Below are positions 406 to 62,317 of a stretch of DNA of 64,000 nt, one piece after another. The stretch is taken from contig NC_043009.1 of assembly GCF_006345805.1 (NCBI RefSeq), positions 71,734,001 to 71,798,000 on the forward strand. The letters run 5' to 3'. The notes below the pieces were generated by a model. The model saw nothing but the letters and a program-made list of their open reading frames with translations. It did not search any database and was not told the origin of the DNA. How positions within the stretch are numbered: the stretch's first letter is position 1; every line of letters starts with the position of its first letter. A program made the translations under genes and the position numbers. This stretch comes from Octopus sinensis (Eukaryota).

Positions 406-473
406 AACAGACCTCATTTGTTAATTTTTTTCATAAATATATTATTATACATTATATTATACATTATATTATA

Positions 474-3274
474 AACTGCTAAGGGCCACTGACCAGATCT
501 GTGGATGGTGCAAAATCCCCTCTCGACCCAAGGTAATGTGGTGGTGGAACAATGTGGTTGACAGGGCTATTAGACAAAAGAAACAGGCTTGGAAGAACTG
601 GAAGAATGAAGGTAGCAGGGAATTGTATCAGACTGCCAAAAGAAAAGTTAGGAGACAGGTCTATTTAGCCAGAGGGGAAGCAGATAAGAAGAAATTTGCC
701 AATGTTCTGCGCCGTGAGGACCAAAGACTTGAGGTGTTTCGTGTTGCAAGACAGTGTGTGAGAGAGAATTGTGATGTCGTAGATGAGAAATGTGTCCGTA
801 TGGATGATGGTTCACTTGCACTAAACGAGGCTGTAAAGAGAGAGGTTTGGAGATGCCACTATGAAAGGTTGCTCAATAAAGAAAATGAATGGGAGAAAGA
901 GAGTCTGCCGAATGTCGACCCAACAGAGGGACCAGCTATCTGAGTTGACAGTACCTTGGTAGATAAAGCAATCAAGAGTATGAATGCAGGGAAAGCCCCA
1001 GGCCCATCAGGAATCACTACAGAGATGCTCAAAATATCTGGCAGTGTTGGCTATACCCTAGTCACCCATAAAGTTAACCAGGTGATACAAGAAGGAGTCA
1101 TATCCAATGACTAGAGTACCAGCACCATAGTCAACTGCTACAAAGGTGAAGGTGATGCTTTAGATATAAATAATTACAGAGGTATCAAGTTGTTGGATCA
1201 GGTAATGACGGTCACGCAGAGGGTCATAGCCCAACTAATTAGAGAGAGAGTCAGTTTAGATGAGATGCAGTTTGGGTTTGTGCCAGGGAAAAGCACCACT
1301 GATGCTATATTTCTGGTAAAACAGCTGCAGGAGAAATACCTAGCCAAAGATAAACTTCTGTACCTGGCTTTCGTTGACTTGGAGAAAGCCTTTGACAGGG
1401 TCCCCCGATCCCTTATCTGGTGGTCAATGAGGAAACTAGGGATAGATGAATGGTTAGTGAGAGCTGTGCGAGCCATGTACAGGGATGCCATCAGTAAAGT
1501 GAGGGTTGGCAACAAGTACAGTGAAGAATTCTAGGTAGAGGTAGGGGTCCACCAAGGTTCAGTCTTCAGCCCCTCCTATTTATCATAGTTCTCCAGGCAA
1601 TAACAGAGGAATTCAAGACAGGATGCAACTGGGAGCTCCTCTATGCTGATGACCTTGCTCTAATTGCTGAGTCACTTTCAGAACTAGAGGAGAAGTTTCA
1701 GGTGTGGAAGTGAGGATTAGAATCGAAGGGCCTTAGAGTCAACCTAGCTAAAACCAAAGTCCTAATAAGTAGGAAGGTAGACAAACCACAAACCCCTTCA
1801 GGTAGATGGCCCTGCTCAATCTGTAGAAAAGGCGTAGGTAGAAACTCTATAAGATGTACCCAGTGTAAGCTATGGACACATAAGAGGTACAGCAATGTCA
1901 AAGGAAGGCTAACTGGGAAGATAGTTTGTGTATGTGGCAGACGCTCAAGAGCAATAAATACTGAAAATGTGCAGAGAACAACTTCCGCCACATTCCAGGG
2001 AGAAAAACTAGAAGTAGTTGATAGCTTCCGTTACCTAGGTGGCCAAGTCAGTAGCGGGGGTGGGGGTGCTGAAAGTGTAGCTGCTAGAATAAGAATAGCT
2101 TGGGCTAAGTTCAGAGAGATCTTACCTCTGCTGGTGACAAAGGGCCACTCACTCAGAGTAAAAGGTAGACTGTATAATGCATGTGTATGAACAGCCATGC
2201 TACATGGCAGTGAAACATGGGCCGTGACTGCTGAGAACATGCGTAAGCTCACAAGGAATGAAGCCAGTATGATCCGATGGATATGTAATGTCAGTGTACA
2301 TACTCAACAGAGTGTAAGTACCCTGAGAGAACCTAAGAAGCATCAGTTGTGGTGTGCAAGACAGACGATTGTGTTGGTATGGTCATGTGGCAAGAATGGA
2401 TGAAGATAGCTGTGTGAAAAAGTGCCACATCCTAGTGGTTGAGGGAACCTATGGAAGAGGTAGACCCAGGAAAACCTGGGACGAGGTGATGAAGCATGAC
2501 CTTCAGACATTAGGCCTCACGGAGGCAATGACTAGTGACCGAGACCTTTGGAAATATGCTGTGCATGAGAAGACGTGGCAGGACAAGTGAGACCATAATG
2601 CATGGCCTTTACCAGGGATGTAGCCAGCCCACTTATGCATACCTTTCCTTCTTTGGACACAAAACTCTGCTTGCAAAGACCTTTTGAGGCAAATGAAATC
2701 GAAATTGAATTCGAAATCAAACCGAATTCGACAAATGGCACCCATGCAAACCTCCCTTCATTGGACACTAAACTCTGCTTGCGAAGACCTGTTGGGGCAA
2801 GTGAAATCGAAATTGAAATAATTCGATGACTGGTACCTGTGCCAGTGGAGTGCTAACAGCTCCATCCGAGTGGGATCATTGCCAGAGCAGCTGTCTGACT
2901 TCCATGCCAGTGGCATGTAAAAAGCACCATTTGAACATGATCGTTACCAGCATCGCCTTACTGGCACTTGTGCCAGTGGCACGTAAACAAAACATTCGAG
3001 CGAGGTCATTGCCAGTGCCACTTGACTGACTCCTGTGCAAAGGGGCATGTAAAAAACACCATTTCGAGCATGGCCGTTGCCAGTACTGCCAGACTGGCCC
3101 TCATACCAGTGGCACTTTAAAAGCACCCACTACACTCTCGGAGTGGTTGGCGTTAGGAAGGGCATCCAGCTGTAGAAACTCTGTCAGAGCAAATTGGAGC
3201 CAGGTGCAGTCATCTAGTTCGCCAGTCCTCAGTCAAATCGTCCAACCCATGCTAGCGTGGAAAGCGGACGTTAA

Positions 3275-3309
<35 letters not shown>
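474..3309 (+). mobile_element. RTE-clade LINE, 5'-truncated and decayed (RT region of ORF2 plus 3' UTR)
   Basis: ORF fragments 536-943, 1190-1534, 1969-2190, 2197-2403 and 2354-2590 carry RTE ORF2 motifs: QFGFVPGKSTTDAIF, AFVDLEKAFDRVP, YADD (1642-1653), FRYLG, HGSETW, RRLCWYGHV, RGRPRKTW. Several premature stops (e.g. 941, 1532, 1711, 2188) and a frameshift near 2330. Ends in (GAT)n. No endonuclease domain is present. Confidence 0.93.
2830..3130 (+). repeat. ~65-69 bp tandem unit x5 in the RTE 3' UTR
   Basis: Motif resembling TGCCAGTGGCACGTAAAAAGCACC recurs near 2833, 2902, 2971, 3034 and 3102. Confidence 0.75.
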
Positions 3310-4197
3310 ACATATGCATTTAAACTTACGCAGATACACGCACACACACACACACACACACGTGTGTGAGTGTCTATGTATGTAAGATTCAAGTAAAGAG
3401 CTTGTAGGATGCTTTACAAAGCTTCTCCACCGTTATTGGCTACCTGGTATCATCCTACATTGGACATGTTCGTATTACTGGATGTAAATCAAGAATTCCA
3501 TAGTAACTGTAGAGTTTATGTAAATAGACAGATGACAGAAAATAGAATTAGCAACATTATTTAAAATCACTACAATTGTTTTGACCCCCACACTTACACC
3601 GTTGCACAATCATTATCTCATAACCATGGTGTAAAATGTGCCTCCTCAGGCAACTGTTTAAATAAGTTAGATTCTCTTGCCATTTCACTACCCAGAGTGT
3701 ATACATACCCCGCCCCCTTGACATCACTCCTTCATTTCTATCAGGCATTCTGTATAACAAGGAACGTCATCAGACAGCATTTGCAAGGGTCCATAATTAA
3801 AATGAACCTGATGCAATCAGTGAAGGGTATTCAGCTGTAGAATTCATGCCAAGAATGGAATGTCTGAGAGAGGCAGAATCTCCAGTTATAATGTAATGAT
3901 CCATCCGACCCATGCCAGCATGGGAAGCAGGTGTAAAATAACATTGAAGATGATGATGATGATGTGTATGTGTGGGGGGGGGAGGTGCATAGGTGCAAGA
4001 ATTGTTTGTATTAAGTGCATCCCTTTGTTGGTGGATCAACCAAGAGTTTACAACCGACATTCTGGTGCAAGGGAATGCTTGAGATAAAATCATAGTCTTT
4101 GGAAAACTTCTTTACTTAAATACAATCTGATGATTGCCTTATTGGCAAGAAATTTAAAGTAATAGAAAATTAGCCGACTTTATTAATAATGGTATAA

Positions 4198-6900: not shown

Positions 6901-7237
6901 ATATCTCGATATATCAATATGTCTACAATATGTTTGAAATCCACCCCACCCCACCCACCCCCATTCACACACTCAAAATAAATCTCTTTTGCGAACGTCT
7001 GCCCCACCACTCTCTCCCTGTGTTCATAACCATCAAATGAGACAAATTCTTCAGCCGTGAATCAATGATGGAACCTCTACATGGTTGCTCAACCTACTAG
7101 AAATAACAGCTGATTTCCCTTCTGTCTTTGAAAAACAAGTTAAGTTAGATGAGGTGATGTAGTCCAAAATAAACTATATCTTTAAAAAAAAATAAAAACC
7201 AATGAAATATCCACAAGCAGAGCACTTTGATCATGAC

Positions 7238-8465: not shown

Positions 8466-9171
8466 AATAAATATTGGTTCTTCAAATATTGTATTTTAAG
8501 AGAAATTAAAGAGAAAAACCAAAAGTTTGGATGAGATCTGAGACTTCTTTGAGATGAAACCATTCCTTTGCATTAAATCTATTAAAATATTTGGCAATTG
8601 TAGAATTTATTGATGTGTGTGTGTGTGCGGTGGCAGTGGTGGTGGTGGCAGTGGTGGTGGTGGCAGTGGTGGTGGTGGTGGTGGTGGTGGTGGTGGTGTA
8701 GCTAAGACTACATTATCCAATTGCACTTCTTTTTGAAGATGGTACAGTGTGAGCTGAGCAAGATTTTACTGCTATTTTAGCTAGTCAAGCAATCCTTTAA
8801 AGGCATTTGAATTAAGCTGGCATAGAGCGAAGTTATGTAGCTCACTGGATCTGATGAACAGAGGCTGTTATAGTAGCTGCAAAAGAGACAAAGAGAAGAC
8901 ACAGCACAGTATGTTGAGGAGTGGGTCTTTAACAATCAACCACTCGACCCTTTAAACAATGTAGGATGTTTGCATATAGCAGCAGCAACATCCTAGATGT
9001 TGCCAAATGTGACCCACACTGTCAAATATAAACTGATTAGTATTCTTCTTTATTTAACAGAGTCATTTTGCAATACGTTAATAGTCCTCAAAGTTTTTCA
9101 CTTTGTCGTGCACAGGTGATCAAGTAAAAAAAATTACAGGTGTACTTCACAATGGAACTAAAATATTTCTT

Positions 9172-9328: not shown

Positions 9329-9361
<33 letters not shown>
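9172..9361 (+). mobile_element. SINE family A head followed by (TA)n(GA)n
   Basis: GCTGTGGTAAG...GTTCAGTCCC...GGAAACTGAAAGAAGCC-type head. Confidence 0.75.
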
Positions 9362-9364
<3 letters not shown>

Positions 9365-9798
9365 CCCAGGAAGACATAGGATGAGGTGGTGAAGCATGAC
9401 CTTCGAACGTTGGGCCTCACAGAGGCAATGACAACAGACCAAAACCTCTAGAGATATGCTGTGATTGAGAAGACCCAGCAAGTAAAGTGAGATCACAGCT
9501 GTAGCCTATACCTGTGTCGCATAACCAGCCCACTCAAAAAGTACCATGGGTCGTAGGGTGACATGCTATGCTTGAGAAGACCTATTGAGTCAAGTAAATC
9601 AAAAATCAAAATTGAGATCAAATTAACCAGTGGCATGTAAATAGCACCCACTACACTCTCAGAGTGGTAGGCATTAAGAAGGGCATCCAGTTGTAGAAAT
9701 ATTGCCAGATCAGACTGGAGCCTGGTGCAGCCTCTTGGCTTGCCAGCCCTCAGTCAAACCATCCATCCCATGCCAGCATGGAAAGCAGACATTAGACA

Positions 9799-9833
<35 letters not shown>
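9362..9833 (+). mobile_element. 5'-truncated RTE LINE copy (ORF2 end plus 3' UTR, (GAT)n tail)
   Basis: Similar to 2462-2590 and 3120-3309. Confidence 0.85.
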
Positions 9834-9856
9834 ATATATATATATATATATATATA

Positions 9857-11479: not shown

Positions 11480-11744
11480 AGAGAGAGAAGAAGAAGAAGA
11501 AGAAGAAGAAGAAAGAGAAAAGAAAAGAGAAAAAGAAGTGCTACTCCCATTCTTTCTTTCTTTCTTCCTCTTTCTTCCTCCAACTACCACACAAGGAAAA
11601 TACATCAAGTGAAGAAATATGATGTGGCTGGTTGCTATAGAGAAGCTTTGAGTGGTGGTGGAGGGGCGGAGGAGAGATTGGATGGGGGCTGTGAGGGGGG
11701 GAGCTGCCACTACACAGCACCAGCAGCATGAGGGAGTGGTGATG

Positions 11745-11777
<33 letters not shown>

Positions 11778-12101
11778 TTGTCAGTTAAAGTGAGGGGAGG
11801 GAGGGGAGGAGGTTCAGAAGAAAAAGAGGGGGGGGGAGAAGTCAAGAAGAAGAAGAGAAGAAGAAGAAGAAAGAGAAAAGAAAAGAGAAAAAGAAGTGCT
11901 ACTCCCATTCTTTCTTCTTTCTTCCTCTTTCTTCCTCCAACTACCACACAAGGAAAATACATCAAGTGAAGAAATATGATGTGGCTGGTTGCTATAGAGA
12001 AGCTTTGAGTGGTGGTGGAGGGGCGGAGGAGAGATTGGATGGGGGCTGTGAGGGGGGGAGCTGCCACTACACAGCACCAGCAGCATGAGGGAGTGGTGAT
12101 G

Positions 12102-12134
<33 letters not shown>

Positions 12135-12235
12135 TTGTCAGTTAAAGTGAGGGGAGGGAGGGGAGGAGGTTCAGAAGAAAAAGAGGGGGGGGGAGAAGTC
12201 AAGAAGAAGAGAAGAGAAAAAGAAATTAAAACCTA
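11480..12235. repeat. Near-perfect tandem duplication, unit ~357 bp
   Basis: GTGCTACTCCC at 11538 and 11896; identical ORF starts at 11652 and 12009. Confidence 0.92.
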
Positions 12236-17961: not shown

Positions 17962-17995
<34 letters not shown>

Positions 17996-17996
<1 letters not shown>

Positions 17997-18830
17997 TCAT
18001 CATCGTTTAACGTCTGCTTTCCATGCTAGCATGAGTTGGACGAATGACTGAGGGCTGGCGAACCAGATGGCTGTACCAGGCTTCAATCTTGATCTGGCAG
18101 AGTTTCTACAGCTGGATGCCATTCCTAACGCCAACCACTCTGAGAGTGTAGTGGGTGCTTTTACATGCCACCGGCATGGGGCCAGTCAGGCAGTACTGGC
18201 AGCGACCTTGCTCGAATCTTTTACACATTCCACCAGCACAGGTGCTCTTTAAGGTGATGCTGGAGGCGATGCTGGTAACGATCACGCTCAAATGGTGCCT
18301 TTTAGGTGCCACTGGTATGAAAGCCGGTTGGCCGCTCTGTCAATGATCACACTCGTATGGTGCTCTTTGCACCCTGCTAGCACAGACGCCAGTCATCGAA
18401 TTTGATTTTGATTTTGATTTTTTATTTCACTTACCCCAACAGGTTTTCGCAAGCAGAGTTTTAGTGTCCAAAGAAGTAAAAGGTACGCATAAGTGGGCTG
18501 GTAACGCCCCTGGCATAGGTCACAGGTTATGGTCTCATTTGGCTTGCCAGGTCTTCTCAAGCATAGCATATTTCCAAAAGTCTCAGTCGCTAGTCATTTC
18601 CTTGGTGAGGCCTAATGTTCGAAGGTTGTGCTTCACCACTTCATCCCAGGTCTTCCTGGGTCTACCTCTCCCACAGGCTCCAGCAACCATAAGGGTGTGG
18701 CACTTTTTCACACAGCTGTCCTCATCCATTCTCACCACATGACCATACCAGCGCAATCGTCTCTCTTGCACACCACATCTGATGCTTCTTAGGTCCAACA
18801 TTTCTCTCAAGGTACTTACACTCTGTCGAG
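17996..18830 (-). mobile_element. 5'-truncated RTE LINE copy
   Basis: Minus ORF 18583-18879 contains QERRLRWYGHVVRM and GRGRPRKTWDEVVKH; 3' UTR and (GAT)n tail as in 474-3309; (TA)n on both sides. Confidence 0.92.
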
Positions 18831-18843
18831 TATATATATATAC

Positions 18844-32247: not shown

Positions 32248-33524
32248 AAATATATGCGCACGCACACACATACACACACACACTTATAGACACACACACA
32301 CACACATATATATATATGTCAGAATATGTATGTTTTTTTATACTTTATGTGTATATAAATATATACATGCACATTTGTGTGTGTGAGTATTGTGATAATA
32401 GCATTACTGGTTAATTGTGTGCATATGTGAGAGATCGTAAAGGTAGGAAGATATTATTCTTGTGTGTACTTCGAGGGGTGGTGGTGGTGGTGGTGGTGGT
32501 GGTGGTGATACTGTTTGACTGAGGTTTAGCCCTGAGCAAGATGACTTATGATCAAAGACAATACCGTCATTAATATCGTATCCTTTTTTTAATTGGCAAA
32601 GTGAACCTAGGATCACATTCTCTAATGCGTTCTTCCTAGTTTTACAACAGTGAAATGGGATTTGAGTGATGCTTGGCTACCGTTTCTTGCAGCTCAACCA
32701 ACCACATAGTGGCACCTCCCTTCATTGGCTCATTTTTCAGAGGAAGTAATTAAGTGTTGGTTGCTAGGTGAGTGGGTGGGAGTGAAAAGTGAAGTGGGTA
32801 GGAGTAGAAATAAGGAAATGGGAGGAGGTAGTGTTTGGGAGATGAGAGAGAGAGAGAGAGGAAATGTGAGGCTGGTTGGACTGAGTTGGTTGAATGGATT
32901 AAATGGTACCAGTTTGGTATGTTACCATTTAGTCAGCAAGATTGAAAAGGCTTATATATGAAGGAAATTGTTGTAAACAATGAAAGATGTTTCAATCATG
33001 ACCATCCTGTCAACATGTATCTAAAACTAAATTAGTCAATGTGTCCAACAAGGTTTTTTTTTTCAAAGTTAGAAGTTGAAGGAGATTTGACTGCTACTAC
33101 TAGCAGGTAGAGTCACTCTCTTATCAGCACGCTACTGTTGTTGTTTTGCTCCAAATCCTTGAGTGATTCCCTGATCAAAGATATTCCGTCCATGACCAAC
33201 ATGTCTTTTAGCTGACCTCATTATTTAATGAGTTTTTTACTTTCCTGAGAGGGAGGAGTGTAGTTTGAGGCAAATTTGGCTGCTATTTATAGCAGGTCAC
33301 ATTCACACATGGAGACTTCATCATATGAAAAGGGTGATGTGAATGTTGTCATGTGGGACGTTTGCTACATGTGAAGTATGTATGACTGCAAGGGGTAAAG
33401 CCAAGCAATTCGTGCACATGTATACATGGGATTGATGTTATTGTTATTTAACCCCAGGCCAATCATAATAGAACATATAGACCTATGATGAAAGACCATT
33501 CCAACTATAACTTTACCATCTTTT

Positions 33525-36405: not shown

Positions 36406-38184
36406 CACACGCATCATCATCTCTCCTAAGGACTCACAGTATGTAAAAGCACTCGCAATTATATTGTTGACAAGCAAGAACGGTGTTGCTTCGGCTGTCG
36501 GAACTGCCAAGTCGTGTTATTTCCTCCCAGACTACATCTGTTCATCACACACACACACACACACACACATAATGCCTAAATTGTTCAAGAAGTTGACAAT
36601 GTCTGGGTTGCTTCTTTGGTTGGTGGTTAGAGCCATGAGCACAGCATGGCCTGCTTTTCCATTTCTTGCATCATGGAATCTGCCTTGTTGATGCCATCAA
36701 TACATCTCTGCAAGAGAAAGTTATAATTTGGCACATTCCACATAGCATTACATTTACAACCTGCAAAAGTTTATCAACACACACCCAGAACACACCTGCC
36801 TGTGCATGTGTGTGTGCATTCACATGTAACAAATAAATGCTGCATGAAGTGCGAACAAAGATGAGGTGGTCTAGGCTGGATTGCTTTTTTCTTTTGCTTT
36901 TTTTTTTTTGATCAATATTGTCCCAGGCCGAAACAACAAAGCCCAAAACACGTCCTGATTATTTGAAGCAGGGCACTGAAGTAGCACAAACAACAGTGTT
37001 GAAATGTTTCGTTTTATTTACCTACAAACCTTTGTGTTGTAGGTTCAAGTTCCCTCGAGGTTGGCACTGCCATATGTTTTTGTTTTGAATCTCTTCAGTA
37101 TTGATAAAAATAAGCTCAAATCCTATACTAGAACCAAATCTCTAAGACTCTTCCTCTGCCAGTATTATTAGTCTGGTGCCAATGTAAGAAACCATTAATC
37201 TACATTCTGTCCATTTCCCTTCATAATGTTCTGTGGGGTCAAGCATTGGCTTTATTCTAATTCATTGAGACCATAAAGCACGGTCTAGATGCTGCTGGTC
37301 TCCCTTCCCAGTGGGGCTAGACCAAGGCAATGGTAAAAGACCTGACAGTATGACAACTTTTCCAGTCTGGGGTGGTAGGGTCCTCACCTGGAAGGTCATA
37401 TTCTCTGACACCTTCTCCAGTAGTGTGTTCAGCTTCTGGCCCTGGCTCCACTGCTTATCAGGCTGAGAGTATTGGTCATTTTCTAATAGGTTTGTGGTCG
37501 ATCTTGTGACAGTGGGAACCTCTGGGCATTCTTGACCCCAGGACCAGATTTTTGCTTGCTCCTATCAGGGTGCAGATGGCTATCTGCAAGCGCAAATCCC
37601 CATGTGTCCGAGTGGCTGGTCCAGTGTATCTCCCTTGTCATCCTCAGAGGACTATGAGGTGAACTGGCAAGCCATTTTAGATATTTCTTTGCTCTGAGGA
37701 AGAGGAAAGGTAAGATGATTCCGACAGGGCCCTTCATCAAATTTATAAAATCGTTTCATTAAACATTTTAATTTTGTCGACCACTGAGGCAGAAATAGAC
37801 TGGAAACCCTTCCCTGAACTACATCTTCTCTTTCCCATAAAAAAAACATGTTTGGCTTTGTGTCAATGCAAGAGGTCTTCATTTAATAGAGAGAGAAGAT
37901 ATCGCGGGGCAAGGATGGAAATAATTTGATTTTTAACAAAACATTTCGTTAAAACAGAATGGTTGGAATGAAGTATTGAATGATATTAGCCAAGACCTCC
38001 TTTTTCGAATAAGCTGAGACAATATGAATTGAAATTCAAAGTATTTCATTTGTATTTCATTTTGCATTGTTCCAGCCTTGTCTCAGAAGTTGTTTAGCCC
38101 CAGGTCAGTCCCGACCCAGTGGAGGAAAGACACTCCACATGGAACCATTCTGGTCTGCATTCATTGCTCAATGTATCCATTTTT

Positions 38185-38292
38185 ATTTGCGCTATGGCGG
38201 TACATATTGTACAATTCGAATGATACAGAGAAGATTGGCATGGCCCCTGCACAAGGATGACACGCAAATTTGTGAAGTGTTCCATATTTTTT
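38185..38292 (+). pseudogene. U6: U6 snRNA retropseudogene, full-length
   Basis: Gap-free alignment to the canonical metazoan U6 as I recall it: ACAGAGA box at 38225-38231, GCATGGCCCCTGCACAAGGATGACACGCAAA, terminal CCATATTTTTT. About 4 mismatches in the 3' 67 nt, including the AGC triad changed to GGC (38237). No TATA at about -30. Confidence 0.93.
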
Positions 38293-38451
38293 CACTACAC
38301 TCTCGGAAGCACATCCAGCTGTAGAAATACTGCCAGATCAGATTGGGGCCTGGTGTAGCCTCCTGGCTTCCCAGACCCCAGTCGAACTGTCCAACCCATG
38401 CCAGCATGGAAAATGGATGTTAAACGATGATTATGATGATGATGATGATGA
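38293..38451 (+). mobile_element. RTE 3' tail fused directly to the U6 3' end
   Basis: CACTACACTCTCGGA...CATCCAGCTGTAGAAA...CAACCCATGCCAGCATGGAAA...(GAT)n matches 3128-3309. Confidence 0.9.
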
Positions 38452-39131
38452 CAGAATTGTGTAAACTGTGGAAGTTTTGGTTATTTCTAGCAGATTGAAT
38501 GACTCATAGAATTTATCCTTGGTTCATTGCTGCAAAGTTTACTCAATTTGTATGAAGTGTTTGGCTTCTTTGAAATTCTCTGTCACAGACTGGCATCACT
38601 GTTGGCATGGTGGACAAAATGCTTAGTGTTTCACCCATCTTTATATTCTGAATTTTTAGGTTGATAAAATAAGTACCAGTCATGTACTGGGGTCACTGTA
38701 ATCGACTTACTCCTACACCTGAACTAACTGGATTTCTGCTAGAATTTGAGACCAATATTCCATGTAAAGAAAACGGCTCAATTCTGCAAATACTGATGTT
38801 GCTGTTTCATCCCAAGCCTTTGATAGTAATAACACTTTCCTTTTATCTTAAGACGTTAGTAAAGGATTTTAGGAAACTTTGGCTGCTGTTTCTAATGGAT
38901 CTATCACCTTTGTAGAAGCCAATTTGTTGCCTCGTACAAATAGTTGTTATTAAACTGTGGTCAGCTCTCACCAACCAGAACTATGACCAAAGCCATTCAA
39001 GTGACCATTTGAATGATATAAGTGTGTGTGTGTGCATGCATGTTGTGTGTATGTGCATGTATGTGTGTGTGTGTATACTGAAGCATGACTGCAGCTGCAA
39101 TGGCTGGCATGTATAAAAACAAATCAAAGAA

Positions 39132-39482: not shown

Positions 39483-39504
39483 AGACACACGCACACACTG
39501 TATG

Positions 39505-40695
<1,191 letters not shown>

Positions 40696-41030: not shown

Positions 41031-43936
41031 GCTCCATCAAACTCAATCTCGCAGATGGGACTATCCACAATACACAAGACCGTCACAGCAAATAGACCCA
41101 AGGTGGACACCACCGGCAACAGCATACACATCATCTCGATGCTCCTACTGAACATCAGAGGACTGCTAACACTCAGTAACAGGACAAAAATCCCGTTCTT
41201 GAGAGACTTTGTTGCATGCAATCAAGCCTTATGCATAGCACTTACGGAAACACACCTGAAACTGGACATAGCAGATGCGGAAATACACATACCACAGTAC
41301 GTTGTACTACGAACCGACAGAAAAGAAAGGAGTCATGGAGGAGTTGCTATGTACATCTGCGAGGACCTCACACCCCAGGTCCTTTTGTCATACTCAAATT
41401 CGGTATGTGACACACTAATTGTACATATAAGGCAACTTGCTGTAGTTATATGTGCTACATATCACCCTCCAGATGCCCCAAGCCATGTAGGCAAGTTTGA
41501 AGACTGCCTTATAAAAATAGAAGTTCTAGTCACATTAGAACAACATATAAGTGTACTTCTTATGGGAGACTTCAATCTACCCAATGTCAGATGGCCCGAG
41601 GGCCTTTCTCTCCCAGGAATGACATGATGCGAACAAGGACAGGCGAGGTCCCTCCTGAACCTCATCAACACTCTGAACATGGAGCAAGTACTACTCCAAC
41701 CAACCAGGGCAGGTAACATACTGGATCTCTGCTTCACAAATAATATGGATCTCATCCATAATGTGAAAGTGACACCGACACTACTCTCGGATCACAACAT
41801 GGTAGAGCTGACCATGTACGGGCCAAAAGAAAGCATGGACATGCAGCCTACAAGAAACTCTCAGAATCTTTCCAGCTTGAACTTCCATAAGGCAAACTGG
41901 AAACAAATTGAGAAAGAGATCCTCAAACAAAACTGGCCTGAATGTCTCTCCTCGCCAGACATTGACATGAAACTTCAACAATTCATGTCTGTAATGCAAG
42001 CTATATGCTACAAATGTGTCCCAGAGAGAAAGGCCACTGTACACAAGAACAAAATCCCCAGAGAGGGGAAAATTCTAATGAGACGGCGTACAAAAATTTC
42101 AAATTGCCTAAACAAACAAATTGAAAGCAGTGAAAAGTCCCGCCTGAAAATAAAACTGTTGGAAATTGAAAAATGTCTGCAACTCTACCATGAAAAAGAA
42201 AGAGCAGACAAAGAAGCCTGGGCTATAGACAACATAAAATCTAACCCCAGAGCTTTCTACAGGTATGCCAAAGAAACAGCTACGGAGCACTGTAGGATAG
42301 GGCCACTCCTTGAAAAGGATGGCACACTCACAGGAAATCCAATGAGGGTAAGTGAAATACTAAATGAGCAATTCAAGAGTGTTTTCAATCCACCCCTAGG
42401 GCATTTTCAAGACAGCAATCCAACTGACTTCTTTACCACTGCAGATATAAAATCAGAGGCAGCGATGATTGATTACATCAATATAAAGGAAGATGATGTA
42501 ATAAAGGCTATAGATGAAATGAAAACAAACTCAGCTACTGGCCCCGATGGATTCCCAGCAATCCTTCTAAAAGTATGTAAGAGAGTCCTAGCAAGACCAC
42601 TGCAGTTCCTCTTTCAGAGCTTCCTTCCAACTGGCAAACTTCCAAGAAAACTAAAGGAAGGTAAAATATGCCCTATTCATAAAGGAGGTAGCAGAGCGGA
42701 GGCCAAGAACTACAGACCTATCTCTCTGACCTCACACATCAGCAAGGTCATGGAACGAATAGTCAGAAGGAAACTAATCACCTTCCTTGAAGAAAATGAC
42801 TTGCTGCCTGACACCCAACATGGTTTCCGACCAGGAAGAAGCTGCTTAACTCAGCTCCTAAAATACTATGACTGGGTGCTGAAATGACTGCTCAACCACT
42901 CAAATGTGGAAGTGATATATCTCGACTTTGCAAAGGCCTTTGATAAAGTCAATCATGGAATGATATGTCACAAACTGCGTGATCTTGGCATAGTTGGAAA
43001 ACTGGGAGAATGGCTTCATGACTTTCTGAAGGATAGAAGTCAGGTGGTAGTAGCCAATGGGGCCACTTCCATTAACACGCAAATAGTGAGCAGTGTTCCG
43101 CAAGGCACTGTTTTGGGACCACTACTGTTCATAATGGCCCTCTCAGACATGCCCTCAGCCACGCAGAGAGCCACGGTCACAAGTTATGCAGACGATACAA
43201 AAGTTTCACAGGCAATACAGAACCCTGAAGACACTAAGCACCTGCAATGTGAGCTGGACAAAATATACAAGTGGGCTGAAAAGAATAGCATGCAGTTCAA
43301 TGCTGAAAAGTTTCAAGCTTTATGCTATCAGCATGCAAAACTAAATGCAATACCCAATAAATACACTGGACCTAGAGGGATTGCAATCCCAGAGGCACAA
43401 TCAGTGCGAGACCTGGGTATTTACATGAGTGATGATGCAACCTTTCATGTGCATATTGCTAGTTTGGCGGTGAAATGTAGGCGGCTGACCGGATGGATTC
43501 TTAGAACCTTTAGAACAAGAGGCCTGGAAACCATGATGGTCCTCTGGAGGACACTTGTTCTAAGCCACTTTGACTATTGCTCTCAGCTATGGTCACCATC
43601 CAGTGTCAAGTTAATCACAGAACTTGAAGTGATCCAACGAAGCTACACGAAGAAGATAGCCTCTGTGCAGCATATAAGCTATTGGGAAAGACTCAAGAGA
43701 TTGAGACTCTATTCCTTAGAGCATAGGCGAGAAAGATATGCCATAATATACATCTGGAAGATCCTAGAAGGACTTGTCCCAAACTTTGGCATCAAGAGTT
43801 ACACAAATGCCAGAACTGGGTGCCACTGCATGGTGCCAAGGACTCCAAATTTGCCATCAAGATGTAGGACAAGATACTGTGAAAGCCTGGGCTTCCGAAG
43901 CCCACAGCTCTTCAATATCCTCCCGAAGAACCTAAG
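41031..43936 (+). mobile_element. CR1/Jockey-group LINE ORF2 (APE endonuclease plus RT), nearly intact, lacking ORF1 and the 3' end
   Basis: ORFs 41055-41627, 41679-42887 and 42906-44003 share one frame, broken only by TGA at 41625 and 42885. EN motifs LNIRGL, ALTETHL, YHPP, GDFNLP, LDLCF, SDHNMV. RT motifs QHGFRPGRSC, YLDFAKAFDKV, VPQGTVLGPLLF, YADD (43185-43196). Similarity ends near NILPKNLR. Confidence 0.95.
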
Positions 43937-44086
43937 AAAAAGTAATAAAAACATGGATTTTTCTTTTTCTTTTGTCTTGATTACGTTTTGGTTGTTTTGC
44001 TAAATTTTTCTCGAACATTTCTTAGTGGTGAGACCATAGCGGATCTATTTCTAACATATGGGTGTCCACATAGGGGTTTCCCTCAT

Positions 44087-44087
<1 letters not shown>

Positions 44088-44119
<32 letters not shown>

Positions 44120-44340
44120 GTTTAACGTCCGTTTTCCGCGCTAGCACGGGTTGGACGGTTTCGACCGGGGTCTAGGGAGCAAGGGACTGCCCCAGGCTCC
44201 AGTCTAGTCTGGCAGAGTTTCTACAGCTGGATGCCCTTCCTAACCCAACCACTCCGCGAGTGTAGTGGGTGTTTTTTACGTGCCACCTGCACAGGTGCCA
44301 GAGGGGTCTGGCATCGGCCACGTTCGGATGGTGCTTTTTT
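44088..44340 (-). mobile_element. RTE 3' tail copy
   Basis: (CAT)n followed by the reverse complement of the RTE 3' end. Confidence 0.88.
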
Positions 44341-47200: not shown

Positions 47201-48416
47201 CACATGCACACACACACACACACACACACATGGAGCCACTCACACATACGTCCACGCACACAACAAGCTTCTACATAGTCTCTGCCTACTAATTTACAGT
47301 CAAGCTGAGGAGGCTAATACCATGTAAACAGAAAGCCAGTTCCAGCCATGACCATCTCACCTAAATATATATATATCAAGGATTATAGTATCAGATTCTT
47401 CTTCATCTTAGACAATGGAGTGTGGTTTTAACAAGATTTAACTGCTATTTTTAGTAGATTTAAGCAACCACCTCGAGGTTCCTGGGTTGGTTCAGGGCTC
47501 CAAGCTAAATGCTGCAGGATGTTCTTTGATTAAACCTCAGCACCGGCTTTAAAATAGATAAGAACAGGAAAAAGCAAGAAATAAAAACTAAATTTTATCT
47601 GCAAAACTGAGACTGGCAGAAGTTTGTTGTGTGAAGTGTTTATATTTTGTTTTCGGTGCTGCCTCATTTCTGAGATAATCTTTTATCTTTATATTATTTG
47701 GAAGAAAAAAGAAGTCTTGGAGGTCTTCACTACAACTGGCAAATTTGGTAAAGCGCAATATCTGTAGAGAGGGCAGATTTGGATTGGGTTTTCTTTCAAA
47801 GGATTATTTTTAGCTTTATGGTTAACCTAAGAGTAACTGAGAAGATATCAAGTGTGTGCACACACACACACACACACACATGCACAGACACGCATGTGTG
47901 CACATACACATACACACAGGCATTCATACACACACATGTACATAAACACACAAACACATGGACTTACACACACACACACCACATTCGCATACACACACAC
48001 AGCTGTACACATTTACACATGTACACACACTGGGGGAGTAAATTAAGACCATCAAACTGTAGGCATACGGTTTTTAAGTTCATGTCCAGTTGAAGTCAAG
48101 ATTTGTACTCTTTGACAAGATCTTCATCACTACTTGCACAGCATATAAGATAGTGACAAAACATACTTAAAATTGGGAAAATAAATCTAAGAATATTGAT
48201 CAACAGCTGACCCCAAACTGCTATACTACCCCCCACTACCCAACACCTTGTACCATGAAGAAAAGGTCACATGGGTTACAATGTTTGTGTATGAGGTTAT
48301 ATTTTTTTACTAGTTTCAGGCCATGCTGGAGCTCTTTGGTGTAACCATATTTGGAGAGTTGGATATTGATTTATATAAAGCATGGAAGGAAAGAAGAGAA
48401 ATAAAGAGAAAAGAAA

Positions 48417-49457
48417 GTGGGTGACATGGTGACAACTTACCACATGGAGAAAGTGGGTGACATGGTGACAACTTACCACATGGAGAAAGTGGGTGACATG
48501 GTGACAACTTACCACATGGAGAAAGTGGGTGACATGGTGACAACTTACCACATGGAGAAAGTGGGTGACATGGTGACAACTTACCACATGGAGAAAGTGG
48601 GTGACATGGTGACAACTTACCACATGAAGAAACTGGGTGACATGGTGACAACTTACCACATGGAGAAAGTGGGTGACATGGTGACAACTTACCACATGGA
48701 GAAAGTGGGTGACATGGTGACAACTTACTACATGAAGAAACTGGGTGACATGGTGACATCTTACCACATGGAGAAAGTGGGTGACATGGTGACAACTTAC
48801 TACATGAAGAACTGGGTGGGTGACATGGTGACATCTTACCACATGGAGAAAGTGGGTGACATGGTGACAACTTACCACATGAAGAAACTGGGTGACATGG
48901 TGACAACTTACCACATGGAGAAAGTGGGTGACATGGTGACAACTTACCACATGAAGAAAGTGGGTGACATGGTGACAACTTACCACATGGAGAAAGTGGG
49001 TGACATGGTGACAACTTACCACATGGAGAAAGTGGGTGACATGGTGACAACTTACCACATGAAGAAACTGGGTGACATGGTGACAACTTACCACATGGAG
49101 AAAGTGGGTGACATGGTGACAACTTACCACATGGAGAAAGTGGGTGACATGGTGACAACTTACTACATGAAGAAACTGGGTGACATGGTGACATCTTACC
49201 ACATGGAGAAAGTGGGTGACATGGTGACAACTTACTACATGAAGAAACTGGGTGACATGGTGACATCTTACCACATGGAGAAAGTGGGTGACATGGTGAC
49301 ATCTTACCACATGGAGAAAGTGGGTGACATGGTGACAACTTACCACATGAAGAAACTGGGTGACATGGTGACAACTTACCACATGGAGAAAGTGGGTGAC
49401 ATTGTGACAACTTACCACATGGAGAAAGTGGGTGACATGGTGACAACTTATCACATG
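48417..49457. repeat. 36-bp minisatellite, ~29 copies (GTGGGTGACATGGTGACAACTTACCACATGGAGAAA)
   Basis: Direct inspection; open in one + frame (VGDMVTTYHMEK)n and two - frames. Confidence 0.96.
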
Positions 49458-49506
49458 GCGAATTCAAAGAGTTAAAACTGTATAAAATATAAAAATAATC
49501 ATAATA

Positions 49507-52188: not shown

Positions 52189-52869
52189 TATTTCAATAAT
52201 TAGATATTATTAGGAATTGTATAAAAAAAAATTGTTATTGTTAAAGTAGAACCAATTTCTTGGGCATAAAATCTTCTATGGACCCCTAAGGGCCATTTGG
52301 ACCCTGGTTGTGAGCCACAGCTTTATGCACTTGATTACCTTACAAATAATAGCAGCCAATTCTCCTTCAAATCACTTTTAAAGATATTTCACTTATCAGA
52401 ACACTTGCCTAAGGTGCCATGCAGTGAGACTGAACCTGGAACCATGTGGTTGGTAAGCAAGCTACTTATCACACAGCCATTCCTGCACCTACATCATCAT
52501 CATTTAACGTCCGTTTTTTTAAGCTGGTATGGGTTGGATGATTTGACTAAAAACTGGTCGGCTGGGGAGCTGCACTGGGTTCCAATCAGATTTCTGGTTT
52601 GGCCTGGTTCCAATCAGCTGGATGTCCTTCCTAACGCCAACCTGGATGGGTTCCCTGCATATAGGAATGGAACAGGATGGTCACTGCTGGAATGCTTTTG
52701 ATCACAAGTCTGCTCAATCAGAGCTGACCTGGGGTTAAATAACAACAATTATCACAGTTGTGAGCCAACAAAGCAGCCTGTACAGAGTCACTTGACCTGC
52801 TAGAAATAGCAAGCAAATTTTCCTCAAATCCCATCTTACAGTGTCTTGAAAATAGAGTACACATTAAAG

Positions 52870-53144
52870 CAGTGATTTTCAACCAGGGTCCATATAAGAT
52901 TTTAAGGGCCCCTGAAAAAGATTTGCTTTAGATGTATGCATTGGTCTGTATTGCAAGAAACAGCTGGGTTTCTTTCTCTGACCTTTTACATGGTTCAACC
53001 TACACAAATTAATGTGAGAAAAACAAAGTACTTTGAAAGGAGTTTCTATAAAACCAGTTTTTAGACATGGAATGGCTTTGGGGATCAACCGGAATAAAAT
53101 AGTAGTCAAAGGGGTTCATGATGACAAATGGTTGAGAACCCCTG
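52870..53144. mobile_element. hAT-type MITE with 8-bp TSD
   Basis: Termini CAGTGATTTTCAACC and GGTTGAGAACCCCTG; TSD CATTAAAG / CATTAAAC (7 of 8). Confidence 0.82.
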
Positions 53145-53518: not shown

Positions 53519-54379
53519 TCCACCACCTCCATTATCAATCCTTACAAGAGAAACAGAGACAGGCAGGCAGCACTGGAATGTTTGATCCCCTGCACAGATA
53601 GAAGGAGTGTCACCCAAAGGAGTGAGCCAGTCCCTTCTCTGTTATGCTTAGGGACCTGCTGTTTATCTTCTCAGCTTTCACTTCTAGTTTATCTCTACTT
53701 CCCTCCCTCACAACCCCAGCTCACTTCACTCACTCTCTCTCTCTCTCTCTCTCCTTCTCTCTTTCTCTGGCCTGCTGCCCTACCCACCACCACAGCCCTC
53801 TAAACACTTGTAGCAGAACCATCACCTAAAGCATCCCATGTCAGTGACCCCCTAATTACTTTAAGACACAACAACATTCTTCTCAAATTCCACATTCCCA
53901 AAATGCAGGAACCAAGAAAACCAGGGAATTGTCATAGACCAGGTTTATAGCCAAACACCAACATTATACACACACACGCATTCTTTTATTCATTAATTCT
54001 TTTGCTTGTTTCAGTATATATATATGGGTGTATATATTCTATTCACAAAGTGTTAGCTACAATAAAAGACATTTCTTCAAGGTGTTGCACAGCAGCATCA
54101 AACCTAGGATCACACGGTTGCAAAGGGAGCTGGGGTTTTTATTTTAGCTATACCACCAGTGAAGTGGTCAAGGCTGGAGAACATCTGATTAGAATTCATT
54201 CAATCAAACCTGACCTGGGGCTAAACAACAACAACAGTACTTGTTTAACCTTAAAAAAAAGCATAACAAGGAGAAGAAAGGGACAAAGAGAAGAACTCTT
54301 TGAGTTGCACAAAACTTGCAACAACAAAATTTGAGAACATTGAACATGGTCCGTATGGCTCTACTATCATCATCATCAT

Positions 54380-56134: not shown

Positions 56135-56579
56135 TATGTGAGTAAATTTCATTTGAAGCCTCTATGTAGTTGTTTGATCAGCCTGTAATAGCAGCCAAAT
56201 ATCCTTTAAATCCCACCATGCCATCTTAGAAAGGAAAGAACATGTTGAATGGTTTGGTCTGTTTAGGCAAAGCTGACCCTGGGTTAAACAACAACAGCAG
56301 CAACAGCATGAACATTGTAGTTGTGGCTAATTAGAAGAAGTATTGATACTGCTGATCCTGAGGGCATGAGTTCAAATGTGTGCCAGGTGTTCTATTGTGT
56401 TTCTGGGCAGAACATTTTATTCTACATGACCCTAGACCTTACCACTTGGTCACCTGATAGAATCTGATAATGCAGCCCAGAAAGGAGCTGATGACTTATC
56501 CAGGAAACTATCTCAAACGTTTGCTTAATGCCAAGAAATCTAATCTTAGAACTGCCCTTTAAAATCTTATTTAAAGCTT

Positions 56580-59171: not shown

Positions 59172-59226
59172 TATATTATATTAAATTAGAGACAAAACCA
59201 CTATTAGGCAAATCCCTAATATTATA

Positions 59227-59455
59227 TCATCATCATCATCATCATCGTTTAATGTCCGTTTTCCGCGCTAGCACAGGTTGGACGGTTCGACCGGGGTCTG
59301 GGAAGCCAGGGGCCGCTCCAGGCTCCAGTCTGATCTGGCAGAGTTTCTACGACTGGATGCCCTTCCTAACGCCAACCACTCCGTGAGTGGAGTGGGTGCT
59401 TTTTACGTGCCACCTGCACAGGGGCCGGGGGGTCCGGAATCGGTCACGATCGGTT
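59227..59455 (-). mobile_element. RTE 3' tail copy
   Basis: (CAT)n plus the reverse complement of the RTE 3' end; closely similar to 44088-44340. Confidence 0.88.
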
Positions 59456-61869: not shown

Positions 61870-62056
61870 GTTTGATATTTCTTTCTAAGACAGAAGAGAA
61901 ATGAGATGCTGTGATATTCATGCCTGTCTCGGGAGCATCAATAACAAAGAGGAATAAACTTGTTGTTGTTGTTTAACACCAGGTCAGCCCTGATCCAACA
62001 GACTTGTCATCGAGAGAATTCCGATCGTGGCCATCTCATCGTTTCCATCTCTAGAA

Positions 62057-62317
62057 CAGTAATTCTTACCTGGGGGTCTACCTGACCCTTTCGGGGCCAA
62101 TGTAGGATTTTGGTGTTAAAAATTTATCAGCAATAAACTTCTTGTAGTTTTACAAAACACAAAATATTTTAATGACTTTTTAAATACAATTCCTTAAAAG
62201 ATTTAATTATAAAATAAAATTAAAATAATCTTTTAAACATGAAATGTCCAGGAGGGTCCAGTAGAGTAAAACATGAACCAAAGGGTCCACAGGTAGAAAA
62301 GGGGTTAACAACCACTG
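62057..62317. mobile_element. hAT (Charlie-like) MITE with NTCTAGAN TSD
   Basis: Termini CAGTAATTCTTACC and GGTTAACAACCACTG; TSD CTCTAGAA (62049-62056) and ATCTAGAA (62318-62325). Confidence 0.8.

What the first reader, a model, noticed from the sequence alone, without database searches (positions are those of the whole stretch)
38185..38451. U6 snRNA-RTE LINE chimeric retrocopy
Seen: a full-length U6 copy (ACAGAGA box, ISL, terminal T6 at 38287-38292) is joined with no spacer to the last ~160 nt of the local RTE family, ending in (GAT)n. The whole unit appears to split a family E repeat (38088-38184 left, 38452-38515 right), and no U6 TATA is visible. No TSD is detectable. Established: mammalian U6/L1 chimeras join the U6 oligo-U end to a LINE 3' fragment and have been attributed to RtcB ligation of the U6 2',3'-cyclic phosphate or to template switching. 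Inference: the same RNA-ligation/retrotransposition route operates with an RTE-clade LINE in an invertebrate, probably a cephalopod. I do not know of a description of this in molluscs.
Basis: partly seen in the sequence, partly recalled or inferred. Interest (0 to 1): 0.75.

Follow-up and report, generated by a model that had tools for sequence, protein, structure and literature searches.

The report
Old U6–LINE chimeric retrocopy in octopus
A decayed full-length copy of the U6 spliceosomal RNA is fused head-to-tail to the last ~160 bases of an abundant octopus LINE and sits as one inserted block inside an older repeat; this structure is already known from mammals, platypus and lizard, and this appears to be a first mollusc example.

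Summary
Rfam finds one full-length U6 at 38189-38291 (95.7 bits). Its T6 run (38287-38292) abuts 38293-38451 with no spacer. That stretch is the 3' end of a LINE family with at least 10 other copies in the window, all ending in (GAT)n. A profile built from 12 other copies of the flanking repeat "E" matches the two flanks joined together as one colinear hit (E = 2.4e-9). So U6 plus tail is a single inserted block. There is no target-site duplication (TSD) and no TATA. The U6 catalytic AGC triad reads GGC. U6 (~12% diverged) and tail (~14%) look equally old.

The best reading (about 0.65) is one LINE-mediated retrotransposition of a two-part template, joined by template switching or by prior RNA ligation. 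Sequence alone cannot separate these two routes.

The main rival is a U6-headed multicopy family. It cannot be tested without the genome. An octopus repeat annotation does list a "SINE/U" class.

The kind is not new. Doucet et al. 2015 reported U6 chimeras with RTE-clade (RTEX-2), L2 and L1 elements in the lizard Anolis. I found no mollusc report. Assignment of this LINE to the RTE clade is plausible but was not formally tested. Verdict: new member of a known kind, with modest interest.

The parts
38185..38292 (+). Full-length U6 snRNA retrocopy (pseudogene), including the terminal T6 at 38287-38292. ACAGAGA is at 38225-38231; the AGC triad reads GGC at 38237-38239.
   Evidence: Rfam RF00026 at 38189-38291, 95.7 bits, model 1-105/105.
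38293..38451 (+). 5'-truncated 3' end of the abundant LINE family (RTE-like). It starts at CACTACACTC just 3' of the family's 66-nt repeat array, has an internal 16-nt deletion near 38305-38308, and ends in a (GAT)n tail at 38427-38451.
   Evidence: BLAST to at least 8 other copies at 80-86% identity. Alignment with upstream context. 86.3% identity to the window consensus.
38088..38184 (-). Left part of the interrupted E repeat, which is the target. In + orientation it begins (GTT)n-AGCCCCAGGTCAG, so E's own sense strand is the minus strand and ends in (AAC)n.
   Evidence: CCCCAGGTCAG motif found 5 times against 0.59 expected. Alignments. HMM positions 91-211.
38452..38540 (-). Right part of the same E repeat. 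It starts at the first base after the (GAT)n tail.
   Evidence: An HMM from 5 other copies hits 38452-38540 at model positions 90-184, E = 6.6e-5 in the whole window. One colinear hit across the joined flanks.
430..3312 (+). Longest copy of the same LINE family in the window. It has a reverse-transcriptase plus PHD ORF with frameshifts, a stop near 2605, a ~690-nt 3' UTR with 66-nt tandem repeats (2905-3086), and a (GAT)n end. It was used as the family reference.
   Evidence: Translations; alignment with the copy at 17993-18836; tandem repeats; homologues 84% identical in Octopus with RVT_1 and PHD domains.
52492..52642 (-). Independent, more diverged tail of the same LINE family, inserted at about the same position of another E copy (E-left 52661-52744, E-right 52307-52395). 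It is a comparison case, not part of the chimera.

Best explanation
This is a single, old retrotransposition event in an octopus genome. The reverse transcriptase of the abundant (GAT)n-tailed LINE family started target-primed reverse transcription on the 3' end of its own RNA, at an AT-rich spot in the middle of an E repeat. It copied about 175 nt, up to the 3' edge of the 66-nt repeat array. It then continued onto the 3' oligo-U end of a mature U6 snRNA and copied that RNA to its first base.

The joint arose in one of two ways. Either the reverse transcriptase jumped templates (my preference, about two thirds of this hypothesis), or U6 had already been ligated to a 5'-OH fragment of the LINE RNA (the RtcB-type route, about one third).

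The LINE tail is there because this type of LINE recognises its own 3' end. U6 is a passenger. The product has no promoter, was dead on arrival and has decayed since.

Shown: the anatomy, the single-block insertion, the lack of promoter and TSD, and the similar age of both halves. Inferred: that the LINE enzyme did it, and how the joint was made.
For: - U6 is complete from +1 to its T6 and is in the same orientation as the LINE tail, with zero spacer.
- The tail runs to the family's natural (GAT)n end, as target-primed reverse transcription requires.
- A profile of 12 other E copies reads straight across the joined flanks (26.1 bits, E = 2.4e-9) but splits on the real sequence. Three or more contiguous E copies show the same left-to-right order. 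So U6 and tail occupy one site.
- The 5' edge of the insert coincides with U6 +1 within 0-4 nt. A jump to the end of a template predicts this. It would be a ~0.3% coincidence if U6 were internal to a randomly 5'-truncated LINE.
- No TATA is present, the upstream DNA is the E repeat, and the AGC triad is mutated.
- Divergence is similar in both halves: U6 88% identical to an intact U6, tail 86.3% identical to the consensus.
- Ten other tails in the window lack U6, and five more on an O. vulgaris locus show no match to the U6 stretch among the listed hits. Kojima's criterion for chimeras versus SINEs expects this (PMC4494074).
- The same architecture was published for L1, L2 and RTEX-2 elements and attributed to template switching (PMC4476161) or to RtcB ligation (PMC6789731 abstract).
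- A T6 Pol III terminator between head and tail, together with U6's external promoter, makes autonomous SINE-type transcription unlikely (established knowledge).
Against: - There is only one copy, so recurrence is untested.
- There is no TSD, so the classical proof of a single event is missing. The paralogue-based empty site replaces it, but it rests on an old, gappy repeat family.
- There is no microhomology at the U6/LINE joint (TTTTTT|CACTAC against family ...GCACC|CACTAC).
- The first 5 bases of the U6 copy are poorly conserved, so its exact 5' end is uncertain by about 4 nt.
- The 16-nt deletion in the tail is unexplained.
- An octopus repeat annotation lists a SINE/U class (369 kb), so a U-snRNA-headed family may exist.
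Confidence: 0.65

Rival explanations
1. The copy is a member of a multicopy U6-headed non-autonomous family (a SINE-like family with a master copy). One founding fusion of U6 to the LINE tail was transcribed repeatedly and mobilised by the LINE. The founder could have arisen by template switch, or by an RTE tail landing just behind a U6 gene with terminator read-through. This copy would then be one of many with an identical joint.
For: - This structure (small-RNA head plus LINE 3' tail) is how SINEs are built (PMC5786205; PMC4494074).
- The O. vulgaris repeat annotation lists one "SINE/U" family (369,490 bp; 19 recent insertions averaging about 730 bp) and one "U-L1" family.
- The 16-nt deletion could be a subfamily marker.
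Against: - No second U6 was detected in the 64 kb, and none of the listed O. vulgaris (L003) matches covers the U6 stretch. Tails without U6 are found every 4-6 kb.
- U6 has no internal promoter, and the intact T6 would stop Pol III before the tail.
- The SINE/U family reported for octopus is about 730 bp long, not 267 bp, and which snRNA heads it is unknown.
- An exact-joint scan of metagenome contigs gave only chance hits, but octopus DNA is hardly represented there, so this is weak.
Confidence: 0.2
2. Two independent insertions happened to abut. A U6 retropseudogene and a 5'-truncated LINE tail landed at the same spot of the E repeat at different times.
For: The middle of E looks like a preferred landing site. 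A second E copy carries an independent tail of the same LINE family within about 5 nt of the same E position. Several family copies lie in (TA)n tracts.
Against: - The zero-base spacer, the same orientation, and a U6 ending exactly at its natural oligo-U with no poly(A) or other LINE tail of its own all count against it. A U6 cDNA has no way to integrate through a 3'-end-specific LINE without that tail.
- The E profile leaves no extra target bases between the two parts.
- The two halves have similar divergence.
Confidence: 0.08
3. A genuine, or recently genuine, U6 gene whose terminator was hit by a LINE insertion.
For: U6 is full length with an intact ACAGAGA box and T-run.
Against: - There is no TATA at -40 to -15, and the upstream DNA is a dispersed repeat that continues on the far side of the LINE tail.
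- The AGC triad reads GGC, GGAACG reads CGAATG, and 12-16% of positions are changed, including most CpGs.
Confidence: 0.03

Closest known systems
U6/LINE chimeric retrocopies of non-L1 clades: U6-RTEX-2_Acar and U6-L2_Acar in Anolis carolinensis, U6-L2/Mon-1 in platypus (Doucet et al. 2015, PMC4476161)
   Same: U6 is fused through its 3' end to a 5'-truncated 3' piece of a LINE that recognises its own tail. There is no poly(A), TSDs are short or absent, and the LINE ends in a simple repeat. These chimeras are read as template switching during target-primed reverse transcription.
   Different: The host here is a mollusc (Octopus) and the LINE family is different. U6 is full length here, whereas most platypus copies are 5'-truncated. 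Only one copy is known here, against 3 to 40 there.
U6/L1 chimeric pseudogenes of mammals (Buzdin 2002; Garcia-Perez 2007; Moldovan et al. 2019, PMC6789731)
   Same: A full-length U6 with its oligo-U is joined directly to a variable 5'-truncated L1 3' end, inserted as one unit without a promoter.
   Different: The L1 copies end in poly(A) and have 7-20 bp TSDs at TTTT/AA sites. Here the end is (GAT)n and there is no TSD. RtcB ligation has been shown only for the human L1 system.
snRNA-headed SINEs (SINEU; Kojima 2015, PMC4494074) and the 'SINE/U' class annotated in O. vulgaris (PMC13282606)
   Same: An snRNA-derived 5' part is followed by a LINE-type 3' part, and template switching is proposed as the origin.
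   Different: SINEU heads are U1 or U2, and the families are high-copy with shared diagnostic deletions. No partner LINE shares the SINEU-1 tail. Here the partner LINE tail is everywhere and U6 is seen once.
MINE and tripartite chimeric retrogenes of Magnaporthe grisea (PMC2104539)
   Same: This is a non-vertebrate case of a LINE 3' end fused to another cellular RNA by template jumps.
   Different: The host is a fungus, the partner RNA is WEIRD rather than U6, and the LINE is MGL.

Membership tests
U6/LINE chimeric retrocopy | U6 copy that reaches its natural 3' oligo-U end and, for the L1 type, is full length at the 5' end | tested here: met
   Rfam model positions 1-105 of 105, 95.7 bits. 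T6 at 38287-38292. +1 at 38185 in the ungapped register against an intact U6; the 5' end is uncertain by about 4 nt.
U6/LINE chimeric retrocopy | Direct fusion in the same orientation to a 5'-truncated LINE piece that runs to the LINE's own 3' end | tested here: met
   TTTTTT|CACTACACTCTCGGA; the family sequence resumes at the first base after T6 and ends in (GAT)n.
U6/LINE chimeric retrocopy | Both parts inserted as one unit (classically shown by TSDs around the whole unit) | tested here: inconclusive
   There is no TSD. The E-repeat profile reads colinearly across the joined flanks at E = 2.4e-9, which supports one site. Missing TSDs were also reported for the opossum U6-RTE cases, and TSDs of only 1-9 bp for 72.5% of platypus U6-L2 chimeras.
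U6/LINE chimeric retrocopy | No U6 promoter upstream (a processed copy, not a gene) | tested here: met
   No TATA-like motif at -40 to -15, and the upstream DNA is the E repeat.
U6/LINE chimeric retrocopy | Several independent copies in the genome with different LINE break points | not testable with these tools
   No octopus genome can be searched by DNA here. The ORF-based and joint-pattern searches found nothing.
RTE-clade LINE (partner element) | Reverse transcriptase that groups with RTE elements in a phylogeny | not tested
   No reference RTE sequences were at hand. The C-terminal pattern (ETW ... GH..RM ... GRGRPRKTW.D ... DRDLW) resembles BovB/RTE, but that is from my memory and is a lead only. 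The closest homologues are unnamed Octopus proteins with RVT_1 and PHD domains.
RTE-clade LINE (partner element) | 3' end made of a short simple repeat rather than poly(A) | tested here: met
   (GAT)n at the end of all 10 or more copies. Microsatellite tails are described as common in RTE and in the octopus RTE-2_OV element (PMC9115989; PMC5786205).
RTE-clade LINE (partner element) | Single long ORF with an AP endonuclease plus reverse transcriptase, and ORF1 absent or rudimentary | not testable with these tools
   All copies in the window are 5'-truncated. The longest starts inside the linker before the reverse-transcriptase domain.
snRNA-headed SINE (SINEU-like) | Many copies with the same head-tail joint and shared diagnostic indels | not testable with these tools
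   One copy in 64 kb, and none of the listed matches between the 21-kb O. vulgaris locus and the window covers the U6 stretch. The genome-wide count is unknown.
snRNA-headed SINE (SINEU-like) | A head able to drive its own transcription through the tail | tested here: not met
   The U6 promoter is external (PMC4494074), and none lies upstream here. An intact T6 terminator lies between head and tail.
Functional U6 snRNA gene | Invariant catalytic and base-pairing residues, and an upstream TATA and PSE | tested here: not met
   AGC reads GGC at 38237-38239, there are 13-17 substitutions, most CpGs are decayed, and there is no TATA.

The most novel reading that the evidence does not exclude
U6-LINE chimeras could be recurrent in cephalopods with this (GAT)n-tailed, RTE-like family. 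This would extend the template-switch or RNA-ligation route from vertebrates to lophotrochozoans. It might also identify the origin of the snRNA-headed "SINE/U" family annotated in Octopus vulgaris, which would be a U6-headed family caught near its birth.
Probability: 0.3. Interest if true: 0.5.

Novelty: new member of a known kind. Interest (0 to 1): 0.3.

Why it matters
If it is confirmed genome-wide, the capture of U6 by LINE reverse transcriptases would be shown in a protostome with a tail-specific LINE. That supports the view that template switching, or U6 ligation to RNA fragments, is an ancestral and general property of non-LTR retrotransposition, and a route by which SINEs acquire LINE tails. 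Such copies could also date bursts of this LINE family in octopus genomes, as U6 chimeras do for L1 in mammals. As a single old dead copy it has no expected function for the host.

Tried and rejected
- **ORFs across the joint.** I used spurious ORFs that span the U6/tail joint to fish other joints out of the 5.8-billion-protein collection. The minus-strand 71-aa ORF gave one hit, which was only the antisense of an intact U6 gene on two ENA contigs. The 85-aa plus-strand ORF and the 402-aa ORF of the neighbouring LINE are not on record. Octopus small ORFs seem not to be in that collection, so this is uninformative.
- **Exact-joint pattern.** TTCCAYATTTTTN{0,4}CACTACAC in metagenome contigs gave 34 stretches. 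None has a U6 core upstream, so all are chance hits.
- **Permissive Rfam scan of the window.** I looked for other small-RNA pieces at LINE 5' ends and found only microsatellite-driven miRNA noise. ARAGORN found no tRNA.
- **Orthologous empty site.** I did not pursue this. No annotated gene within reach anchors the locus. At 12-14% divergence the insertion probably predates the O. vulgaris / O. bimaculoides split (13-33 My; JC 0.09 is about 25 My in PMC13282606).
- **First flank search.** Plain BLAST found no E copies. Only relaxed scoring, nhmmer and an iterated profile revealed the family.
- **E-left plus tail as one composite SINE.** I considered this because a second E copy shows the same neighbourhood. 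I rejected it because E-right resumes after that insert too and at least 3 E copies are contiguous without any tail.
- **U6 as an internal part of a LINE subfamily's 3' UTR.** I rejected this because no other copy shows it, and the insert's 5' edge coincides with U6 +1.
- **RTE clade assignment from the literature on PHD or RTEX.** Nothing decisive was found.

Full report
**What is there**

The window has one real U6 match. Rfam RF00026 hits 38189-38291 on the + strand at 95.7 bits (gathering cutoff 44), E = 1.8e-23, covering model positions 1-105 of 105. A permissive scan of all 64 kb adds nothing except microsatellite-driven noise. The ACAGAGA box (38225-38231) and the internal stem-loop region are recognisable, and the copy ends in T6 at 38287-38292.

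I compared it with an intact U6 gene that turned up on two ENA metagenome contigs (L001 and L002). It shares two variants with that gene (TGCACAAGG and AAATTTGTG), so these need not be decay. The rest is decay:
- The catalytic AGC triad reads GGC (38237-38239).
- GGAACG reads CGAATG.

No TATA-like motif lies at -40 to -15, and the upstream DNA is a dispersed repeat. This is a dead processed copy, not a gene.

**The tail**

Bases 38293-38451 match at least eight other places in the window at 80-86% identity (E down to 6e-42), and all end in (GAT)n. With upstream context, the other copies read ...GTAAAAAGCACC|CACTACACTCTCGGAGTGGTTGGCGTTAGGAAGGGCATCC.... The copy here reads TTTTTT|CACTACACTCTCGGA-AGCACATCC.... 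So the family sequence begins at the first base after the U6 T-run with no spacer. The copy also lacks 16 bases between two GGA repeats.

The family is a LINE. The longest copy (about 430-3312) carries a frameshifted reverse-transcriptase ORF that stops near 2605. A ~690-nt 3' UTR with 66-nt tandem repeats follows, then (GAT)n. Its reverse transcriptase is 84% identical to proteins of Octopus bimaculoides and O. vulgaris and carries RVT_1 and PHD domains. A 21-kb O. vulgaris locus shares the window's repeat families, including at least five tails of this LINE. The host is therefore an Octopus or a close relative.

The 5' ends of the eleven copies differ, as expected for 5'-truncated LINE copies. 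The U6 joint sits exactly at the 3' edge of the 66-nt repeat array. The retained piece keeps the long hairpin predicted for the tail, though covariation support is weak.

I did not test the label "RTE" with reference sequences. The simple-repeat tail fits (PMC9115989; PMC5786205). The C-terminal pattern resembles BovB/RTE from my memory, which is only a lead. The other LINE in the window (41055-44003) has a different C-terminus that looks CR1-like, again from memory.

**One insertion or two**

Plain BLAST found no relatives of the flanks. Relaxed scoring and nhmmer did. The left flank begins (GTT)n-AGCCCCAGGTCAG, a motif present five times against 0.59 expected. The right flank holds TATTTCTAGCAGRT, present nine times against 1.5 expected. 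Several copies carry both parts in the same order without anything between them (33125-33350, 47330-47520, 32584-32738, 56154-56259).

A profile built from 12 copies, none of them this locus, matches the joined flanks (38089-38184 plus 38452-38537) as one colinear hit: model positions 91-309, 26.1 bits, E = 2.4e-9. On the real sequence it breaks into two hits of 10.2 and 6.2 bits. A smaller profile places the start of the right part exactly at 38452.

So the 267-base U6-plus-tail block interrupts one E copy at ...CCATTTTT^CAGAAT.... There is no target-site duplication.

**Age**

The tail is 86.3% identical to the consensus of the window's copies, in the middle of the family's range of 69-94%. 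The U6 half is 88% identical to an intact U6. The two halves look equally old. On the scale used for O. vulgaris (JC 0.09 is about 25 My; PMC13282606), that is roughly 30-40 My, a rough inference.

**Mechanism**

The anatomy matches U6/LINE chimeras:
- a full-length U6 ending in its oligo-U;
- direct fusion, in the same orientation, to a 5'-truncated LINE piece that reaches the LINE's own 3' end;
- one insertion site;
- no promoter.

The most likely history is one target-primed reverse transcription by this LINE's enzyme that ended on U6 RNA. Two routes give this product: template switching (favoured for tail-specific LINE clades by Doucet et al. 2015) or prior ligation of U6 to a LINE RNA fragment (RtcB, shown for human L1; PMC6789731). 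The DNA product is the same, and there is no microhomology at the joint to help decide. I put 0.65 on the single-event chimera and lean to template switching within it.

**Rivals**

- **A U6-headed multicopy family (0.2).** This is the real open alternative. Against it, U6 has no internal promoter, the intact T6 would stop Pol III before the tail, and U6 appears once against ten or more U6-less tails in the window. Five more tails on the O. vulgaris locus show no match to the U6 stretch among the listed hits. Kojima's criterion expects this pattern for chimeras. In its favour, the 2026 O. vulgaris repeat annotation lists a "SINE/U" family (369,490 bp; recent copies about 730 bp long) and a "U-L1" family. 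Their composition is not given.
- **Two independent insertions (0.08).** This is hard to reconcile with the zero spacer and with U6 having no tail of its own. However, the middle of E does look like a preferred landing site (see below).
- **A live U6 gene (0.03).** This is excluded by the mutated triad and the missing promoter.

**Comparison with what is known**

U6 chimeras are not restricted to L1. Doucet et al. 2015 found three U6-RTEX-2 copies, three U6-L2 copies and three U6-L1 copies in Anolis, and about 40 U6-L2/Mon-1 copies in platypus, with TSDs of only 1-9 bp. They also found two doubtful U6-RTE cases in opossum without TSDs. They concluded that template switching to U6 is a general property of LINEs. 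Fungal MINE elements show the same principle with another RNA (PMC2104539).

I found no paper in the held library that reports U6 chimeras in molluscs or other invertebrate animals, but the library is incomplete. This is a new member of a known kind.

**Limits**

No octopus genome could be searched by DNA with these tools. The attempts to get round that all failed or were uninformative: ORFs across the joint, exact protein look-ups and a joint pattern in metagenome contigs. Recurrence, the orthologous state and RNA evidence remain open. The E-repeat argument rests on an old, gappy family.

**In passing**

A second E copy (minus strand, 52744-52307) is interrupted within about 5 nt of the same E position by an independent, more diverged tail of the same LINE. 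About 85 nt of a tRNA-like SINE head follows that tail. Several family copies sit in (TA)n tracts. This suggests a target preference, which I did not resolve.

Noticed in passing
window 52307-52744 (minus strand): A second E-repeat copy is interrupted at about the same E position (within ~5 nt) as the U6-tail unit. The insert is an independent, more diverged tail of the same LINE family (52642-52492, starting TTGGCGTTAGG), followed by ~85 nt of the 5' part of a tRNA-like SINE (52478-~52397), before E resumes at 52395. This could be a landing hot spot or an odd composite; it is unexplained.
   Followed up: partly
window 38088-38540 and at least 12 other places (e.g. 33125-33350, 47330-47520, 32584-32738, 56154-56259, 8702-8804, 7033-7184, 52746-52914, 54040-54262, 61945-62160, 38844-38921): Repeat family 'E' is about 220 nt long and old. 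On its own sense strand it ends in (AAC)n or (ACC)n, so it looks like a SINE-like retroposon with a trinucleotide tail. It is unclassified.
   Followed up: partly
window 17993-18836 (-), 9356-9834 (+), 59226-59455 (-): Copies of the (GAT)n-tailed LINE family lie in or next to (TA)n microsatellites on one or both sides. This suggests a preference for TA-rich targets.
   Followed up: no
window 41055-44003 (+): A second, unrelated LINE has nearly open endonuclease and reverse-transcriptase ORFs (190, 402 and 365 aa). Its C-terminus looks CR1/L2-like. A minus-strand tail of the (GAT)n family lies just after it, at 44086-44339.
   Followed up: partly
L001 1037-1133 and L002 319-415 (ENA metagenome contigs): An intact U6 gene with a T7 terminator shares the TGCACAAGG and AAATTTGTG variants with the window's copy. 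The organism is unknown, and L001 carries none of the octopus repeats.
   Followed up: partly
window 2905-3086 and the equivalent part of other copies: The LINE's 3' UTR contains a variable number of 66-nt tandem repeats, each ending GTAAAAAGCACC. The U6 joint lies exactly at the 3' edge of this array.
   Followed up: partly
window 48412-49462; 39501-40695; 11486-12224: There are three large repeat arrays: a 36-nt tandem array of 29 copies at 94% identity (it creates long spurious ORFs on both strands), a 1.2-kb (TA)n tract, and a 357-nt unit repeated 2.1 times.
   Followed up: no
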